Under the pieces are notes generated by a model, which saw only the letters and a list, made by a program, of their open reading frames with translations, had not been told where the DNA came from and made no database searches. A DNA stretch of 64,000 nt from the IMG/VR virus record IMGVR_UViG_3300042516_005475, positions 166,048 to 230,047 of that record. One strand, 5' to 3'. A program made the position numbers and the translations under genes. Below, piece after piece: positions 4,019-8,746 of the stretch (position 1 is the stretch's first letter; each line of letters opens with the position of its first letter).

Positions 4019-4411
4019 ATGAGCTATTATCTCTTTTTGGACGATGAACGCTTCCCTCAAGATGTCACTTGGGTGAAGCTCCCACCCCACAACTGGACCA
4101 TTGTTCGCAACTATGCTGACTTTGTGCGAACCATTGAGAACAAAGGTTTGCCTGTGGAAATTGCCTTTGATCATGACTTGGGACACGAGCATTATCAGGC
4201 CTATCATGCCGCTGCTAAGCCTGGACATGGAGTCATTGATTACAGCAGCTTCAAGGAGAAGACTGGTCTCGACTGCGCCAAGTGGCTCATTGAACATTGT
4301 AACGAGAAGAATTTGCCGTTCCCCAAGTATTATGTTCACTCCATGAACCCCATTGGCAAGCAGAATATCATCAACGCTGTCAATTCCTTCAAAAGATATT
4401 TGCAAAAGTAG
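4019..4411 (+). CDS. cyclic-phosphate-processing receiver (cREC-type REC) domain protein
   Basis: LFLDDER.P, IAFDHDLG, TGLDCAKWL, VHSMNPIG motifs of this stand-alone receiver family. Confidence 0.8.
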   Translation: MSYYLFLDDERFPQDVTWVKLPPHNWTIVRNYADFVRTIENKGLPVEIAFDHDLGHEHYQAYHAAAKPGHGVIDYSSFKEKTGLDCAKWLIEHCNEKNLPFPKYYVHSMNPIGKQNIINAVNSFKRYLQK

Positions 4412-4440
4412 TGGCGTTCCTTCAAAAAAGCAGCCATAAT
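4411..4440 (+). promoter_or_regulatory. early-type promoter driving the ncRNA cluster
   Basis: gtggcg-ttcc...-CATAAT followed by GATTGTAGAAAAT, matching promoters at 26128, 27200 and 27485. Confidence 0.65.
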
Positions 4441-4554
4441 GATTGTAGAAAATTTAGAACGGTAGTAACGTTCAACAGGTGCTGACAATACGTAGAAAAA
4501 GATAGTGTTGGCTAAGTGCGAGTTGTAGTGCCTCCAGCCTGTGTTCTTTTCAAT

Positions 4555-4873
4555 GCGATCGTAGCTCAACGGTAGAGCATCGGCCTTTAATAGGAGCGCT
4601 TATAGAGTGATCTATAAGATGAACCGAGCCATATGCGGGGACCTCCTTAGAGCCTTGAGTACCGTAAGGTAAAAATCTCAAGGATTGGACAATCCGCAGG
4701 AAACCAGTAGATTAGTACGCTGTTGGTCATAAATTGGGATCCTCAGAGACTTTACGCTTGGCATCTCTAAAAGAGATGATGATAAAGTCCAGACTACAAC
4801 GGAAACGGCTAGTGAAAACTAGAGTAGTAAGTTAAGCCGGGTGTTGTGGATTCGAATTCCACCGGTCGCACCA
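4555..4873 (+). tRNA. trnK: tRNA-Lys(UUU) interrupted by a group I intron; exons 4555-4587 and 4832-4873
   Basis: Acceptor GCGATCG/CGGTCGC, D arm GCTC/GAGC, anticodon stem TCGGC/GCCGG, spliced loop CT-TTT-AA, T arm GTGGA-TTCGAAT-TCCAC, encoded ACCA end. Confidence 0.9.
4588..4831 (+). ncRNA. group I intron, 244 nt, no ORF (IC3-like)
   Basis: P ATGCGGGGAC 4633, Q AATCCGCAGG 4691, R CCTCAGAGACTTTA 4741, S GATGATAAAGTCC 4778; P7 GACTTTA/TAAAGTC; P3 CCGAGC/GCTTGG; P1 CTT/GAG; terminal G 4831. Confidence 0.92.
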
Positions 4874-4972
4874 TATTTGCCAACAGGGCTCAGCTTGATG
4901 CTTTGGACAGATAACAAAGTCTGATAGAGAGGCTAGTGCAGAAAATCCTGTATAAACTGCACATTAATTTTT

Positions 4973-5047
4973 CGGCAAGAGTCCTGATCAGACATGGTAA
5001 AGTGCCTGCAGAGGGCACGAGGCAGGTTCAAGTCCTCCATCTTGCCG
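4973..5047 (+). ncRNA. tRNA-like structured RNA without a normal anticodon arm
   Basis: CGGCAAG/CTTGCCG stem, TGGTAAA D-loop-like segment, GTGCCT/GGGCAC hairpin, AGG-TTCAAGT-CCT T-arm. Confidence 0.6.
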
Positions 5048-5070
5048 TTCAATTTAGTTCTTTTACATTT

Positions 5071-5162
5071 GAGTTGGAGCTGTATCCGCAAGGACAGCAT
5101 GGTGTTAGTGAAAGCATTGGAAATGCAGTCTTTCACCGGACTACGACGGTTCCATCCAACTC
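5071..5162 (+). ncRNA. structured RNA with the same architecture as 4973-5047
   Basis: GAGTTGG/CCAACTC, GCAA-tetraloop hairpin, ATGG/CCAT, GTGAAAG/CTTTCAC. Confidence 0.55.
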
Positions 5163-5169
5163 TTTAAAT

Positions 5170-5311
5170 TTATCTGTAGCTCAGCGGTAAGAGCAGAGTT
5201 CCTAACTATGGGTAAAGCCCTTAAAAATCTTATGTTAGGTCGTAAAATTGCCTTGTACTGATATTTTACAAGTTGTAAAAGTAGCCGTTGGTTCGATTCC
5301 AACCAGATGAA
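5170..5311 (+). ncRNA. tRNA-like RNA with a ~90 nt structured segment replacing the anticodon/variable region
   Basis: Acceptor TTATCTG/CAGATGA, TA-GCTC-AGCGGTAA-GAGC D arm, GTTGG-TTCGATT-CCAAC T arm; middle has CCTAAC/GTTAGG and CTTGTA/TACAAG. Confidence 0.7.
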
Positions 5312-5406
5312 CAATTACGCCCGGAGAATACCCGATAAATAGGACACTTAATTTGGTTCCCCATCAGAGGATTAAAACGCCAATTAAAAGACCGGCGACA
5401 ATTTTA

Positions 5407-5539
5407 TGCCAGGAGAGCGCGAGTAATACGCCTTCAGCTAGATGTAGTAATTAGCGTCTAGCAACGAGAAGAACAAAGGAAACCGAAGTAATTACCGGCT
5501 AACCTTTTATAGGTGGATAAAGAACCACCCCTGACACCA
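5407..5539 (+). ncRNA. CCA-ending tRNA-like RNA
   Basis: TGCCAGG/CCTGACA (one mismatch) then CCA; GGTGG/CCACC hairpin in T-arm position; internal GCTAGATG/CGTCTAGC stem. Confidence 0.45.
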
Positions 5540-5566
5540 ATTTAACAAGACAGATAGACGTGTAAG

Positions 5567-5621
5567 TAAGCTTTGGAAGCCACCCATAAGTGGGTGACTG
5601 GGTTCGATTCCCAGGAGCTTA
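5567..5621 (+). ncRNA. 55-nt minimal tRNA-like element
   Basis: TAAGCTT/GAGCTTA acceptor, TGGAAG linker, CACCCA-TAAG-TGGGTG hairpin, CTGGG-TTCGATT-CCCAG T arm; inside an AACAAG/CTTGTT outer stem (5544-5678). Confidence 0.6.
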
Positions 5622-5739
5622 TTAGGGAACAAACTGCCATCTCGACGAGAGAGCGTAGGTGAAATCCTGAAACTTGTTTCAAATTTTATTTGCAGTTCCT
5701 GTTACTTTCAGTTAAACTAAACGTAGTAAAAATAAAAAA

Positions 5740-6042
5740 ATGAACAAAGAAATCGTTAACATCGTTCGGGACCGCAAGGGTAATCCTCGTGGTTATGTTG
5801 TCGCTACTAAGCTCGAGAATGGTAAGGTTGGCCTTGGCTGGTCTTATGTTAATGTTAAGGCTGGAGATCGCTTCGACAAGTATCTCGGCCAAAAGATCGC
5901 CATGAATCGAGCCTTTACTGGTACTGATAAGTTTGTGCCTCGTGACGTGATGAAGGTGATTGATCGGGTGTCTTCTCGCGCTGTGAAGTACTTCAAGGCT
6001 CCTATTGATGCCTACCCTCAGCAAGTTGTTACTGTTGCGTAA
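5740..6042 (+). CDS. hypothetical early protein
   Basis: Downstream of TTGCAG-17-TAAACT promoter; GWSYVN...DRFDK.LG.KIA. Confidence 0.65.
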   Translation: MNKEIVNIVRDRKGNPRGYVVATKLENGKVGLGWSYVNVKAGDRFDKYLGQKIAMNRAFTGTDKFVPRDVMKVIDRVSSRAVKYFKAPIDAYPQQVVTVA

Positions 6043-6057
6043 ACAATTGCTAATGTT

Positions 6058-6264
6058 ATGATTAAAATCCTTGTTGATCTCGATACTGAAGGTGACAGCT
6101 TCAGAGGTAATATGTCTGGAGAAGTCACCAAGATCTCTAGGGATATTGGTGAAATGATCTTGGAAGTAATTAGCAAAGATGCTACTTGTGTATCGCGAGA
6201 TATCATCGATGCTGGAGATAATAAAATTGGTGTAGTAACTATTACTAATCCTTGGAGGGAATAA
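6058..6264 (+). CDS. hypothetical protein
   Basis: 68 aa ORF co-oriented with neighbours. Confidence 0.55.
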   Translation: MIKILVDLDTEGDSFRGNMSGEVTKISRDIGEMILEVISKDATCVSRDIIDAGDNKIGVVTITNPWRE

Positions 6265-6286
6265 CTAAAAGGGCATAAATATCTTT

Positions 6287-7684
6287 ATGCCTGTTAACAG
6301 TAATGTAACAACTCCTAATTACCAAACTTTAGAGTATCAAAAGTTTGTCCAAATATATAATGATACTAGATTCCCTCCAATAACAAGTGTAAGATCTGAC
6401 TATTATAGCGGTACACAGATTGAGATATATGATAAGTATGCTGTATTAACTTTTGATATTGGGCAAAATGCAGCTCTAGGACCAGCTAATACGTTGCCGT
6501 TTGGAGATAATGCTGCTAGTGATGCCTTTGGTAGACTGAGAGTTTCTCTCCCATCTACCTTATTTAACTCTAAACAAAATAATGATAGTAATTCTTTACT
6601 CTATAGCACAGCAACTGTAAATACAGGTAGTTGGTATTTTGATAACAATAATGCCTGTACAGTCTTATCTGTTTCAGCAACAGGAGATGTTGCTATAAAG
6701 CAGTCAAAAAAGTATATGAATTATCAGCCTGGCAAATCCCAGCTGATATTCGAAACCTTTGTAATGCCTAACACAGCAGGCATAGTTAACAGAGTTGGTT
6801 TATTTGATAGCTCAACAACTTCTCCATATAGCAATAATATTGAGGGTTATTATTTTCAATGTAATAATGGAGTAAATTCTTTCCATATTGCTAATGTTGG
6901 TGACGAGCCAAGCCAAAGCGCTTTACAATCTGAATGGAACATAGACAAGCTTAACGGTACAGGTTTATCTGGTATAACATTAGATGTTACAAAAACCCAG
7001 ATTTTAGTAATAGATTACGAGTGGTTAGGGGTAGGGAGAGTTAGAATGGGGTTCTGTATTAATGGTATTATATTTTATTGTCATCAATTCGTTCATGCAA
7101 ATGAAGTCTCTCTTCCTTATCTCCAAGATCCAAACAAACCTATTAGATATGAAATTAGAAGCACAGGTGGAATAGGTTCATTAAAACAAATATGCGCTAG
7201 TGTTATGAGTGAAGGTGGAAGTGTTGATAACGCTATCCCGTTATCTATTGATACTGGGTTTGACAGTATTGGTAATATTTCAAGCAATACATTATGGCCA
7301 GCTATAACTGTTAGACTAAAAGATTCTTTTAAGAGTGTAGATATACAATTAAAAGACTTTGCTGCAATGGCTTTCTCAACTACTAATACTCTTGTAAGAG
7401 TAGTATCAAATGGTGTTATTTCTAATTCAGCAGCCTTTGTTGATATGAGCTCTGGGGCCTTGGAATATAGTATAGGCACTACTTCTACTACTCTTACTGG
7501 AGGTGTTATATTATTCAGCTCTTTTTTTAATAAGGCCAGCAATACTATTAGTCAATTAGGAGAGTCTTTATATAGTTTAGGTAGCAACATAAACGGCACC
7601 AAAGATACATTATCATTAGTATTAGTTCCATGTGGAGGAAATGAAAAGTATTTTGCTGCAATGAACTTCAAACAGTACCTATAA
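6287..7684 (+). CDS. putative virion structural protein (beta-rich)
   Basis: 465 aa S/T/N-rich; DAFGRLRVS, YQPGKSQL, DYEWLGVGRVRMGF; TAAATA 6276-6281. Confidence 0.6.
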   Translation: MPVNSNVTTPNYQTLEYQKFVQIYNDTRFPPITSVRSDYYSGTQIEIYDKYAVLTFDIGQNAALGPANTLPFGDNAASDAFGRLRVSLPSTLFNSKQNNDSNSLLYSTATVNTGSWYFDNNNACTVLSVSATGDVAIKQSKKYMNYQPGKSQLIFETFVMPNTAGIVNRVGLFDSSTTSPYSNNIEGYYFQCNNGVNSFHIANVGDEPSQSALQSEWNIDKLNGTGLSGITLDVTKTQILVIDYEWLGVGRVRMGFCINGIIFYCHQFVHANEVSLPYLQDPNKPIRYEIRSTGGIGSLKQICASVMSEGGSVDNAIPLSIDTGFDSIGNISSNTLWPAITVRLKDSFKSVDIQLKDFAAMAFSTTNTLVRVVSNGVISNSAAFVDMSSGALEYSIGTTSTTLTGGVILFSSFFNKASNTISQLGESLYSLGSNINGTKDTLSLVLVPCGGNEKYFAAMNFKQYL

Positions 7685-7729: not shown

Positions 7730-8746
7730 ATGGAACGTAAACTTGCTAGTGTTCGTAAGATTCAAGAAATTAAGCTCATCGAAGGTGCTGACAAGATTTG
7801 CGCCTACCGAGTTGATGGTTGGTGGGTTGTAGATAGTATTAATAAGTATAATGTTGGTGATCTTGTGGTCTACTACGAGATTGATAGCTTTCTACCAATC
7901 ACTCCTCAATTTGAGTTTCTCCGCAAGTCTTCATTCAAGAAGATGGGTGAACGTGAAGGCTTTAGGCTCAAGACTATTAAGCTCAAGGGCCAGCTCAGCC
8001 AAGGTCTCTTGACTAAAATTCCAATTGGTCTCATTGTACCTCCTAAGGAAAATGATGACATGACTGAGTTGCTCGGCATTATCAAGTATGAGCCTCCTAT
8101 TCCTGCTGAGCTAGCTGGTGAGATCAAGGGTTCGTTCCCTAGCTTCATCCCTAAGACTGATGAGGTTCGTATTCAGAACTTTGAAAGGGAAGTTGGGGTT
8201 TCTATCGCTAATGAGCGAGTTTACGCTACTGAGAAGGTTGATGGTACTAGCTTTACTTGTTATGTTAACAATGGTGAGTTTGGTGTTTGTGGTCGCAATT
8301 GGGAGTTGAAGGAGACTCAAGGTAACTCTCTTTGGCGAATGGCTAACAAGCTCAATCTTCGTGAGAAGCTCTTGAGTCTCAATCTTAACATTGCCTTGCA
8401 GGGTGAGTTGTTTGGTAGTGGAATTAATGGTAATTGGTACAAGCTCAATGATCACCGACTCATGTTCTTTACTGGATATGATATTGATAATCAAAAGCGA
8501 TTGCAGTTTAATGAGTTAATGAACTTGTTGGATAGTTTGCAGTTGGAAAGTGTTCCTGTTATTGATTATATTGCTACTATTCCAGATGGTACTATGGCTG
8601 AGATCGTTGAGTGGTCTTTGTTGTATGCTGAGTCTGAGAGTAATATTAATGCTGCTGTAGAGAACGAAGGTGTTGTTATTCGTGGTCTTGAGAAGGAGTT
8701 TAGCTTCAAGGCTATTAGTAACAAGTGGCTCCTTAGTGAAAAGTAA
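7730..8746 (+). CDS. RNA ligase (DRB0094/Rnl5-like, N-terminal OB domain)
   Basis: MERKLAS...IEGADKI OB domain; FIPKTDEVRIQN; TEKVDGTS; LQGELFG; EGVVIR; SFKAISNKWLL. Confidence 0.88.
   Translation: MERKLASVRKIQEIKLIEGADKICAYRVDGWWVVDSINKYNVGDLVVYYEIDSFLPITPQFEFLRKSSFKKMGEREGFRLKTIKLKGQLSQGLLTKIPIGLIVPPKENDDMTELLGIIKYEPPIPAELAGEIKGSFPSFIPKTDEVRIQNFEREVGVSIANERVYATEKVDGTSFTCYVNNGEFGVCGRNWELKETQGNSLWRMANKLNLREKLLSLNLNIALQGELFGSGINGNWYKLNDHRLMFFTGYDIDNQKRLQFNELMNLLDSLQLESVPVIDYIATIPDGTMAEIVEWSLLYAESESNINAAVENEGVVIRGLEKEFSFKAISNKWLLSEK

What the first reader, a model, noticed from the sequence alone, without database searches (positions are those of the whole stretch)
4973..5162. Two adjacent RNAs share an unusual architecture despite different sequence
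Seen: both read 7-bp stem, A, hairpin, ATGG, short linker, GTG...CAC hairpin, T-like hairpin, CCAT, 3' strand (CGGCAAG/CTTGCCG versus GAGTTGG/CCAACTC). Structure kept with changed sequence is internal covariation. In the first unit the small hairpin loop CTGATCA is 7 nt like an anticodon loop (GAU) but sits directly after the acceptor. Inference: a paralogous ncRNA family.
Basis: partly seen in the sequence, partly recalled or inferred. Interest (0 to 1): 0.7.

Follow-up and report, generated by a model that had tools for sequence, protein, structure and literature searches.

The report
Two tRNA-like phage small RNAs
The two adjacent elements are real, conserved small-RNA genes in a lake phage's tRNA and RNA-repair island, but they are two different tRNA-like cassettes, not paralogues held together by the proposed ATGG/CCAT helix.

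Summary
The window is part of a 230-kb freshwater jumbo phage. Both units lie in a 1.3-kb non-coding island with an intron-split tRNA-Lys(UUU). The island sits between a cREC (cyclic-phosphate-processing) gene and an RNA-ligase gene.

Related phages from lake metagenomes carry the same island. In them the units are gained and lost separately, with breakpoints at the terminal stems. Compensatory changes support the terminal stem and hairpin 2 of unit 1, and hairpins 1 and 2 of unit 2.

It forms in 62.5% of cells in unit 2, and its A-T pair is lost in 3 of 6 unit 1 variants. Each unit's covariance model scores the other at noise level (7-8 bits).

Unit 1 is tRNA-shaped, with a genuine T-loop and a GNR(N)A pentaloop where an anticodon loop would be. 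Unit 2 has a GNRA-capped hairpin and probably a 5-bp pseudoknot next to its terminal stem.

Best reading: these are non-decoding tRNA mimics made alongside the phage tRNAs. A role in the conflict over tRNA cleavage and repair is inferred, not shown. No Rfam family matches.

The parts
4973..5047 (+). Unit 1, a 75-nt tRNA-shaped small RNA. Terminal 7-bp stem is 4973-4979 with 5041-5047.
   Evidence: Read. Model R2 finds it at 84-107 bits in 11 related loci. Pair 2:71 changes G-C to A-U in L020. Homology in relatives' contigs ends exactly at 5047.
4981..5001 (+). Unit 1 hairpin 1 (GUC / CUGAUCA / GAC, loop holds the palindrome UGAUCA) plus linker AUGGUAAA. This is the invariant block.
   Evidence: Alignment columns 9-30 are identical in all 6 distinct variants, apart from a 1-nt linker deletion in L012, while other parts vary. 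There is no covariation, so the 3-bp stem itself is untested.
5002..5018 (+). Unit 1 hairpin 2: a 5-6 bp stem capped by a G-N-R-(N)-A pentaloop (5008-5012), not an anticodon loop.
   Evidence: G-C changes to A-U (L020), G-U (L038) and U-G (L041). Loops seen are GCAGA, GAAGA and GAAAA. Variants in RNA-run contigs change only 5009 and 5011, the two N positions. G stands where tRNA has U33.
5021..5038 (+). Unit 1 T-like arm: GG(C)AGG / UUCAAGU / CCUCC, with a bulge.
   Evidence: Loop variants UUCAAGU, UUCGAAC and UUCAAAU keep U54, U55, C56 and A58, with R at 57. L020 carries a 16-nt extra hairpin at the bulge. The inner pairs do not covary, and L012 uses a shifted register.
5071..5162 (+). Unit 2, a 92-nt small RNA. 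Terminal 7-bp stem is 5071-5077 with 5156-5162, invariant in sequence.
   Evidence: Model R1 scores 104-111 bits in L008, L009, L019, L022, L024, L025, L038 and L041. L004/L005 lack exactly 5071-5165. An exact RNA-run contig starts at 5071. In L025 it starts 7 nt after a TTGACT-17-TAAGAT promoter.
5079..5098 (+). Unit 2 hairpin 1: a bulged stem capped by a GNRA tetraloop (GCAA 5088-5091).
   Evidence: Three different sequence versions (loops GCAA, GUGA, GUGA) keep the stem. Five of 7 pairs have changes on both sides, and 97.6% of cells are paired.
5108..5136 (+). Unit 2 hairpin 2: a 7-bp lower stem, internal loop, 3-4 bp upper stem and apical loop UGGAA (5118-5122).
   Evidence: U-A changes to C-G in the lower stem, and A-U changes to G-U and G-C in the upper stem.
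5150..5154 (+). Unit 2 segment UUCCA next to the 3' strand of the terminal stem.
   Evidence: Five of 5 pairs form in all 6 variants, and A-U changes to G-C in L019, L022 and L024. Caveat: RNAalifold explains the same change by a nested pair, 5135 with 5150.
4555..4873 (+). Context: tRNA-Lys(UUU) interrupted by a 244-nt group I intron (4588-4831), at the head of the RNA island.
   Evidence: Rfam Intron_gpI scores 70.9 bits. ARAGORN -i finds the tRNA. The spliced joint 4587>4832 is in contigs of three RNA runs.
4019..4411 (+). Context: cREC_REC (cyclic-phosphate-processing receiver) gene bounding the island upstream.
   Evidence: Pfam PF20274, 82.8 bits. It is syntenic in L004, L009 and L012.
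7730..8746 (+). Context: RNA ligase gene downstream of the island.
   Evidence: Pfam PHA02142 OB-fold plus RNA_ligase, and PHROG RNA ligase. It is syntenic in all longer relatives.

Best explanation
Units 1 and 2 are two separate small-RNA genes, not paralogues. They sit in a variable island of tRNAs and tRNA-like RNAs in a freshwater jumbo phage.

**Shown**
- Both are conserved, structured, + strand elements.
- They are gained and lost as discrete cassettes whose limits are their 7-bp terminal stems.
- Unit 1 has a tRNA-like layout: an acceptor-like stem, a small hairpin in the D position, a hairpin in the anticodon position and a T-arm with a canonical T-loop. Its 'anticodon' loop is a GNR(N)A pentaloop with G at position 33, so it cannot decode.
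- Unit 2 has a GNRA-capped first hairpin and a long second hairpin.

**Probable**
- The UGGAR loop of unit 2's second hairpin pairs with YUCCA beside the 3' strand of the terminal stem. That 5-bp pseudoknot plus the 7-bp stem would give a 12-bp stack, the length of a tRNA acceptor/T-arm.

**Inferred**
- Both are transcribed with the phage tRNA-Lys, or from their own promoter as in L025.
- Host tRNA-processing enzymes (RNase P type) release them, and they accumulate as stable RNAs.
- They act as non-decoding tRNA mimics in the phage-host conflict over tRNA cleavage and repair. For example, they could be decoys or competitors for tRNA-directed nucleases, or partners of the flanking repair enzymes.
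- The invariant parts are the likely contact surfaces: the hairpin 1 plus AUGGUAA block in unit 1, and the terminal-stem sequence in unit 2.
For: **Conservation and structure**
- R1 and R2 hit relatives at 84-111 bits.
- In unit 2, 8 pairs change on both sides and 98.4% of cells pair, against 23-45% for slid controls.
- Unit 1 has compensatory changes in the terminal stem and hairpin 2. Its G-U variants work only on the + strand.

**Cassette behaviour**
- L004/L005 delete exactly 5071-5165.
- Unit 1 and unit 2 each occur alone in different relatives.
- Minimal islands (L198, L199) have neither unit.

**tRNA likeness of unit 1**
- R2 aligns end to end with unrelated tRNAs. T4 tRNA-Leu scores 18.6 bits (E 1.7e-4) and T4 tRNA-Gln 16.1 bits. 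The phage's own tRNA-Gly scores 18.2 bits. Unit 2 gets only 7.9 bits.
- T-loop variation follows tRNA rules.

**Not a decoder**
- ARAGORN finds no tRNA in the window at default settings.
- No Rfam tRNA hit falls on the units. The best match is tRNA-Sec at 16.7 bits against a cut-off of 47.
- Loop variation is confined to the N positions of GNR(N)A.

**Expression**
- The exact spliced tRNA-Lys is in RNA runs, so this phage's island is transcribed.
- Contigs in RNA runs cover unit 1 and unit 2.
- Run X22 holds 68% of the words of 4960-5170 but only 6% of 4400-6300, so only the unit region is in that run's contigs.
- A promoter lies 7 nt before unit 2 in L025.

**Context**
- The cREC and RNA-ligase genes flank the island in all longer relatives.
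- Phage tRNAs plus RNA ligases are read as a counter to host tRNA cleavage in PMC7824862.
- Precedent: T4 rnaC and rnaD lie at the end of its tRNA cluster.
Against: - No direct data exist on the RNA ends, on processing, or on any function.
- The runs are assembled contigs, not reads. One of the runs laid (X21) may be DNA.
- Only six distinct sequences per unit are available, falling into about three lineages. Each compensatory change is one or two events.
- The change supporting the unit 2 pseudoknot can also be explained by a nested pair.
- In unit 1, hairpin 1 and the T-arm never covary. Thermodynamic folding alone supports only the terminal stem and hairpin 2 (centroid). RNAalifold proposes a different interior.
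- R2 was built with my cloverleaf-like structure, so its tRNA hits are partly a consequence of that choice.
- No CCA is encoded.
- The decoy or cofactor role rests only on gene neighbourhood.
Confidence: 0.55

Rival explanations
1. Units 1 and 2 are paralogues of one ncRNA family whose defining feature is a 4-bp ATGG/CCAT helix. That helix closes a two-hairpin domain inside a 7-bp stem.
For: - In this phage both units carry every listed element in the same order.
- R2 aligns unit 2 end to end through the stem, first hairpin, CAUGGU and CCA (7.9 bits).
- TGG/CCA is invariant in unit 1.
Against: - In unit 2 relatives ATGG becomes ACGG and CCAT becomes CCAA. Only 62.5% of cells pair and no change is compensated.
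- In unit 1 the A-T pair is lost in 3 of 6 variants. In L020 the changed base instead pairs with position 8.
- Cross-scores equal noise.
- The units are inherited independently.
- The bare motif is as common in shuffled genomes.
Confidence: 0.1
2. The units are decayed tRNA genes or mere processing signals. Their tRNA-like shape only recruits RNase P or RNase Z to cut the island transcript. The pieces have no function of their own.
For: - Location inside a tRNA cluster.
- 7-bp terminal stems on most cassettes of the island.
- Unit 1 resembles tRNAs.
- The cassettes are dispensable, since relatives lack one or both.
Against: - A 22-nt block of unit 1 and the whole terminal stem of unit 2 are invariant while neighbouring stems change. 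This argues for sequence-specific selection beyond shape.
- GNRA-type loops are maintained through complete stem replacement.
- Unit 2 has its own promoter in L025, so nothing upstream needs cutting there.
- In run X22 the words held fall in the unit region and not in its flanks.
Confidence: 0.2
3. They are working but unusual tRNAs or aminoacylated tRNA-like adaptors. For example, they could fill the missing tRNA-Tyr or act as suppressors.
For: - The genome's canonical tRNA set lacks Tyr, and Lys is supplied only by the intron-split gene.
- Unit 1 has an acceptor stem plus T-arm, and hairpin loops of 7 nt.
- tRNAs with odd cloverleaves are known (PMC5389517).
Against: - No loop has the U33 and purine-37 frame. 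Hairpin 2 has G33, and its 'anticodon' positions vary freely among close relatives.
- Hairpin 1 has a 3-bp stem and C at position 37.
- There is no GUA anticodon in a proper loop.
- tRNA models fail.
- Unit 2 has no T-arm.
- No CCA is encoded, although the neighbouring tRNA-Lys encodes it.
Confidence: 0.05
4. Unit 2, with its pseudoknot and GNRA loop, is a small self-cleaving ribozyme or a ligand-sensing element acting in cis on the island transcript.
For: - Compact pseudoknotted fold with a tetraloop and many invariant unpaired bases.
- It sits beside a group I intron.
Against: - No Rfam ribozyme or riboswitch family matches even at E 10.
- No downstream ORF is consistently linked to it.
- It occurs in different positions of the island.
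Confidence: 0.07

Closest known systems
Phage T4 species 1 and species 2 RNAs (rnaC, rnaD)
   Same: Both are small stable RNAs of unknown function encoded at the end of a phage tRNA cluster. rnaC carries a terminal stem and a T-arm-like hairpin with loop UUCGAAU.
   Different: No sequence or model similarity: R2 gives only a 5.8-bit T-loop fragment hit on rnaC. The T4 RNAs are longer, at 139 and 119 nt. They have no GNR(N)A-capped hairpin, palindromic-loop hairpin or pseudoknot as here.
Bacterial Y-RNA-like tRNA mimics (YrlA) of Ro/Rsr-RtcB RNA-repair operons
   Same: Both are non-decoding RNAs with a tRNA-like module encoded next to RNA-repair genes. PMC7824862 notes that some jumbo phages carry this kind of system.
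   Different: No Ro/TROVE gene is found in this 230-kb genome. There is no Ro-binding stem and no Rfam Y-RNA hit. The repair genes here are cREC and an ATP-dependent RNA ligase, not RtcB.
Plant-virus tRNA-like structures (TYMV type) and the tmRNA tRNA-like domain
   Same: In both, a tRNA acceptor/T-arm-sized stack is built with the help of a pseudoknot or non-canonical connections. This matches the proposal for unit 2 (a 7-bp stem plus a 5-bp pseudoknot).
   Different: Those are 3'-terminal parts of long RNAs and are aminoacylated. Unit 2 is a free-standing 92-nt gene, its pseudoknot involves a hairpin loop rather than the 3' end, and charging is untested. This comparison is from general knowledge, not a tool test.
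mascRNA / D-arm-less tRNA-like RNAs
   Same: Both are small tRNA-like RNAs released by tRNA-processing enzymes. A neighbouring element of the same island (5567-5621) gives a weak mascRNA-model hit (20.5 bits).
   Different: That hit is below threshold (42.5 bits), and the family is eukaryotic. Units 1 and 2 themselves give no hit.
Lambda-type boxB GNRA-like pentaloops (motif level only)
   Same: The unit 1 hairpin 2 loops (GCAGA, GAAGA, GAAAA) fit G-N-R-(N)-A, and variation is limited to the N positions.
   Different: This resemblance to boxB is recalled from memory and is a lead only. No N-like protein or nut context was tested.

Membership tests
Canonical tRNA (Rfam RF00005 / ARAGORN) | Detection by tRNA models at threshold | tested here: not met
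   ARAGORN finds no tRNA in the window. There is no RF00005 hit on 4973-5162 even at E 10. The best match is tRNA-Sec at 16.7 bits against a cut-off of 47.
Canonical tRNA (Rfam RF00005 / ARAGORN) | 7-nt anticodon loop with U33 and purine 37 | tested here: not met
   The unit 1 hairpin 2 loop is Y-G-N-A-N-A-S, with G at position 33. The hairpin 1 loop CUGAUCA has C at position 37 and sits on a 3-bp stem. The unit 2 loops are GNRA and UGGAR.
Canonical tRNA (Rfam RF00005 / ARAGORN) | 7-bp acceptor stem and T-arm with a UUCRANY loop | tested here: inconclusive
   Unit 1 meets this: it has the 7-bp stem, and its T-loop variants obey the consensus. However, 2 nt separate the T-arm from the acceptor stem, and the T-stem has a bulge. 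Unit 2 has the stem but no T-arm.
   Unit 2: 62.5% of cells pair, with the A-U pair in 1 of 6 and the U-A pair in 2 of 6 variants. Unit 1: the A-U pair is in 3 of 6 variants, and the other pairs are invariant and contested.
   R2 on unit 2 gives 7.9 bits (E 0.16). R1 on unit 1 gives 7.0 bits (E 0.62). Both were run with filters off in 1.35 kb. There are no cross-hits in 187 kb of relatives.
T4 rnaC/rnaD-type stable RNAs | Small non-tRNA RNA gene inside a phage tRNA cluster | tested here: met
   The island holds tRNA-Lys(UUU), and relatives add tRNA-Lys(CUU) or tRNA-Met.
T4 rnaC/rnaD-type stable RNAs | Sequence or structure homology to rnaC or rnaD | tested here: not met
   R2 on the T4 region hits the tRNAs. 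On rnaC it gives only a 14-nt T-loop fragment at 5.8 bits.
Y-RNA-like (YrlA) tRNA mimics | Partner Ro/TROVE protein and Ro-binding helix | tested here: not met
   PF05731 has no match in the whole 230-kb genome, while the control genomes were positive. There is no Rfam Y-RNA hit.
allo-tRNA (8/4 or 9/3 cloverleaves, PMC5389517) | 12-bp acceptor branch split 8/4 or 9/3, with a working anticodon loop | tested here: not met
   An eighth pair forms in only 4 of 6 variants. The T-stem is not adjacent to the acceptor stem, and there is no anticodon-type loop.
RNase P / tRNA-processing substrates | Cleavage at the 5' end of the terminal stem | not testable with these tools
   The hints are indirect. 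An exact RNA-run contig begins at 5071, the cassette breakpoint is at 5071, and homology ends at 5047.

The most novel reading that the evidence does not exclude
The island is a swappable array of RNA anti-defence cassettes. Each 7-bp-closed RNA (units 1 and 2, the tRNA-like element with an 86-nt insert, the D-arm-less mimic, and others in relatives) is a tRNA mimic tuned to trap or mislead a particular host tRNA-targeting immune nuclease, or to feed the phage's cREC/RNA-ligase repair pathway. Phages trade these cassettes as bacteria trade defence genes.
Probability: 0.2. Interest if true: 0.85.

Novelty: new variant of a known kind. Interest (0 to 1): 0.55.

Why it matters
Phage-encoded tRNAs and RNA ligases are understood as answers to host enzymes that cut tRNAs. 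Small non-tRNA RNAs in phage tRNA clusters, known since the T4 species 1 and 2 RNAs, still have no function. This case offers a well-delimited pair of such RNAs with several advantages:
- natural variants;
- cassette-like gain and loss;
- a fixed neighbourhood of RNA-repair genes;
- traces in metatranscriptomes.

That makes the question 'what do tRNA-cluster stable RNAs do?' testable in a new system. It also corrects the structural model that would otherwise be carried forward.

Tried and rejected
1. GenBank phages: blastn of 4400-5720 matched only the group I intron core.
2. IMG/VR scans gave no close relatives:
   - the 100-aa ORF and the 465-aa structural protein;
   - the cREC protein, which gave only two unrelated loci;
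   - two unit 1 DNA patterns, with no matches.
3. The loose unit 2 pattern GAGTTGG-N65-90-TCCAWCCAACTC gave 23 viral matches and 120 or more genome matches. All were chance. R1 scored 24 bits or less on 100 of the resulting loci, against more than 104 bits for true copies.
4. Of the 25 metagenome hits to the unit 1 18-mer, 19 were chance and 6 were real.
5. More divergent relatives of the 100-aa ORF (L198-L201) carry minimal islands without either unit, so they added no new variants.
6. No second copy of either unit exists in the 230-kb genome.
7. No Ro/TROVE gene is present.
8. Fold search of the downstream 100-aa protein gave only a weak Acb4-like match (E 0.1), which is not used as evidence.
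9. ARAGORN's 'tRNA-Pyl(cta) with a 56-nt intron' for 5170-5311 is rejected as unreliable. Its anticodon stem is G-U rich, and the call changes to Thr, Trp or Arg in relatives.
10. RNAalifold's interior for unit 1, which pairs hairpin 1 with the T-loop, was considered. It is not adopted because it has no covariation and one pair breaks in L012.
11. Complex prediction was not used, because it gives no verdict for RNA.

Full report
**Where this is.** The window is bases 166048-230047 of a 230-kb IMG/VR virus record that CheckV rates complete. DNA runs from many lake-water metagenomes hold it. Its structural proteins are about 35% identical to those of T4-like cyanophages. Outside the window the genome carries 24 canonical tRNAs and a tmRNA, covering every amino acid except Tyr and Lys.

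The finding lies in a 1.3-kb stretch with no convincing ORF (4412-5739). On one side is a gene for a cREC 'cyclic-phosphate processing' receiver domain (4019-4411, PF20274). On the other side are a conserved 100-aa ORF, a 68-aa ORF, a virion protein and an RNA ligase (7730-8746).

The stretch opens with tRNA-Lys(UUU), interrupted by a 244-nt group I intron (Rfam 70.9 bits; ARAGORN with introns). Contigs from three metatranscriptomes carry the exact spliced joint 4587>4832. So the island of this phage or its near kin is transcribed and the intron is active.

**The observation.** Unit 1 is 4973-5047 and unit 2 is 5071-5162. Each folds moderately better than shuffled sequence (z -1.96 and -2.38).

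The generic pattern is not rare, however. A 7-bp stem enclosing ATGG and ending in CCAT plus the 3' strand occurs 29 times in the genome, against 21-50 in shuffles. The sequence alone therefore does not prove anything, and the decision has to come from relatives.

**Relatives.** Homologues of the 100-aa ORF led to contigs from lake and river metagenomes with the same gene order. Pattern scans added more. The island is a mosaic:
- The leader and tRNA-Lys(UUU) are constant.
- The intron is absent in the relatives.
- tRNA-Lys(CUU), tRNA-Met, unit 1, unit 2, a tRNA-like element with an 86-nt insert, a larger structured RNA, a D-arm-less tRNA-like element and several other stem-closed RNAs come and go.
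- L004/L005 lack exactly 5071-5165, which is unit 2 plus three bases.
- L012, L020 and L026 have unit 1 only, while L019, L022, L024 and L025 have unit 2 only.
- L198 and L199 have neither unit.
- In L025, a different 105-kb phage, unit 2 begins 7 nt after a TTGACT-17-TAAGAT promoter. That promoter is a copy of four promoters just upstream.

The two units are therefore independent genes whose limits are their terminal stems.

**Unit 2 structure.** Six distinct versions were aligned.
- Hairpin 1 exists in three unrelated sequence versions. All have a 5'-side bulge and a GNRA tetraloop (GCAA, GUGA, GUGA). Five of its seven pairs change on both sides.
- Hairpin 2 has compensatory changes in both its lower and upper stems.
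- Overall, 98.4% of cells pair, against 23-45% when partners are slid.
ATGG becomes ACGG and CCAT becomes CCAA without compensation, giving 62.5% pairing.
- Instead, the apical loop UGGAA (5118-5122) is complementary to UUCCA (5150-5154), and the two change together to UGGAG/CUCCA in three relatives.

I read this as a 5-bp pseudoknot lying next to the 7-bp terminal stem. Together they would make a 12-bp stack, the size of a tRNA acceptor/T-arm. That last step is inference.

There is a caveat. The change is a single event on one branch, and RNAalifold can account for the 5150 change with a nested pair to 5135. The pseudoknot scheme explains all four co-varying columns as two pairs, while the nested scheme explains only two of them. 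I therefore prefer the pseudoknot, but it is not proven.

**Unit 1 structure.** Six distinct versions were aligned.
- Terminal-stem pair 2:71 changes G-C to A-U.
- Hairpin 2 shows G-C changing to A-U, G-U and U-G. The wobble variants work only on the + strand.
- The hairpin 2 loop reads Y-G-N-A-N-A-S. All variation, including variants seen in RNA-run contigs at 5009 and 5011, falls on the N positions of a G-N-R-(N)-A pentaloop. G stands where tRNAs have U33, so this is not an anticodon loop.
- The third hairpin carries UUCAAGU, UUCGAAC or UUCAAAU. Variation falls only where true T-loops vary.
- L020 inserts an extra hairpin at the bulge of this arm.
- The block from hairpin 1 through AUGGUAA is invariant.
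- The ATGG/CCAT helix cannot be decided. Its A-T pair is lost in three variants, and in L020 the changed base pairs with position 8 instead. The other three pairs never vary and compete with the outer GG/CC pairs of the T-arm.

With the cloverleaf-like structure, the unit 1 model aligns end to end with unrelated tRNAs. These include T4 tRNA-Leu at 18.6 bits and tRNA-Gln at 16.1 bits, and the phage's own tRNA-Gly at 18.2 bits. It gives unit 2 only 7.9 bits. Unit 1 is thus tRNA-shaped, but no tRNA detector accepts it.

**Are the two units one family?** The two covariance models do not find each other in 187 kb of related loci. With filters off they score each other at the level of reverse-strand and random hits. 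Neither unit has a second copy in the genome. Similar architecture with different sequence between two non-homologous elements is not covariation. What they share is the tRNA-like format common to the island's cassettes.

**Expression.**
- RNA-library contigs cover 4871-5047 and 5021-5184.
- One exact contig starts at 5071.
- Run X22 holds 68% of the sampled words of 4960-5170 but only 6% of 4400-6300. That amounts to about the same dozen words, so only the unit region is in that run's contigs. This is what a stable small RNA would give and DNA carry-over would not.

These are assembled contigs, so the ends are not proven.

**Mechanism.** The shown steps are conservation, structure, strand, cassette behaviour, tRNA-cluster context and transcription of the island. 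The inferred steps are:
- release by tRNA-processing enzymes;
- accumulation as stable RNAs;
- action as non-decoding tRNA mimics in the conflict over tRNA cleavage and repair.

This inference rests on three points. Phage tRNA-Lys genes are present. A cyclic-phosphate-processing domain and an RNA ligase bracket the island. The published reading of such gene sets in jumbo phages is that they counter host tRNA cleavage (PMC7824862). Whether the RNAs are decoys, cofactors or something else is open.

**Comparison with known systems and novelty.** The nearest precedents are the T4 species 1 and 2 RNAs at the end of its tRNA cluster and the Y-RNA-like tRNA mimics of RNA-repair operons.
- The T4 RNAs have the same genomic setting and also lack a known function, but no homology was found.
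- For the Y-RNA-like mimics, no Ro gene is present here.
- No Rfam family matches.

I rate this a new variant of a known kind: tRNA-like stable RNAs of phage tRNA clusters. Interest is moderate to good, mainly because the variable cassette island next to repair genes makes their function testable.

Noticed in passing
window 4555-4873: tRNA-Lys(UUU) carries a 244-nt group I intron (4588-4831) in the anticodon loop. The exact spliced form is in contigs of three metatranscriptomes. All fetched relatives have the intron-less gene, and most add a tRNA-Lys(CUU).
   Followed up: partly
window 5170-5311: A tRNA-like gene with canonical acceptor, D- and T-arms (Rfam tRNA 36.4 bits) has 86 nt where the anticodon arm and variable loop belong. 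It is conserved in relatives with covarying inner hairpins. ARAGORN's anticodon call changes between relatives (Pyl, Thr, Trp, Arg), and no splice joint was seen in the RNA contigs.
   Followed up: partly
window ~5318-5560: A larger conserved non-coding stretch (core ATGCCAGGAGAGCGCGAGTAATACGCC, plus a GGTGGATAAAGAACCACC hairpin) is present in L004, L009, L012, L015 and L025. It has no Rfam match and no coverage in the four runs laid on it (three metatranscriptomes and X21, which may be DNA).
   Followed up: no
window 5567-5621: A D-arm-less tRNA-like RNA has a 7-bp stem, a 6-bp hairpin and a T-arm with loop UUCGAUU (fold z -2.67). It gives a sub-threshold mascRNA-model hit (20.5 bits), and its single-stranded UGGAAG recalls the UGG elements of units 1 and 2.
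   Followed up: no
window 4412-4554: The island leader is conserved in every relative, including minimal islands (L198, L199). Its hairpin GCTGACA/TGTTGGC shows compensatory changes (GCCGACA in L012, a perfect TGTCAGC in L004).
   Followed up: no
window 4546-4552, 5057-5063; L004, L009, L012, L015, L019, L024, L025: The motif GTTCTTT(T) recurs a few bases upstream of most RNA cassettes. In L025 one copy overlaps the -35 of a TTTACA-16-TAAGAT promoter. It could be a promoter remnant or a processing signal.
   Followed up: no
L025 5637-6930: Five near-identical promoters were found: TTGACT-17-TAGGAT four times and TTGACT-17-TAAGAT once. The first four drive small ORFs and the fifth drives unit 2. 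This looks like an early-gene array of a different 105-kb phage that shares several RNA cassettes with this one.
   Followed up: partly
window 5740-6042: The conserved 100-aa ORF directly after the island has a confident predicted fold (pLDDT 84). Its best PDB match is weak: phage SPO1 Acb4, an anti-CBASS nucleotide sponge (E 0.1, TM about 0.4).
   Followed up: partly
whole genome (G000): The canonical tRNA set (24 genes plus a tmRNA, at 108-165 kb) lacks only Tyr. Lys is supplied only by the intron-split gene in the window.
   Followed up: no
L012 1001-1160, L015 263-425; L019 246-330; L024 116-240: Further cassettes are absent from this window. One is a ~160-nt RNA starting GCAGCAATGAGGAC, also seen as loose ends in RNA runs. 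Two other RNAs are closed by 7-bp stems (GAGAGTT/AGCTCTC and CCAAGCA/TGCTTGG).
   Followed up: no
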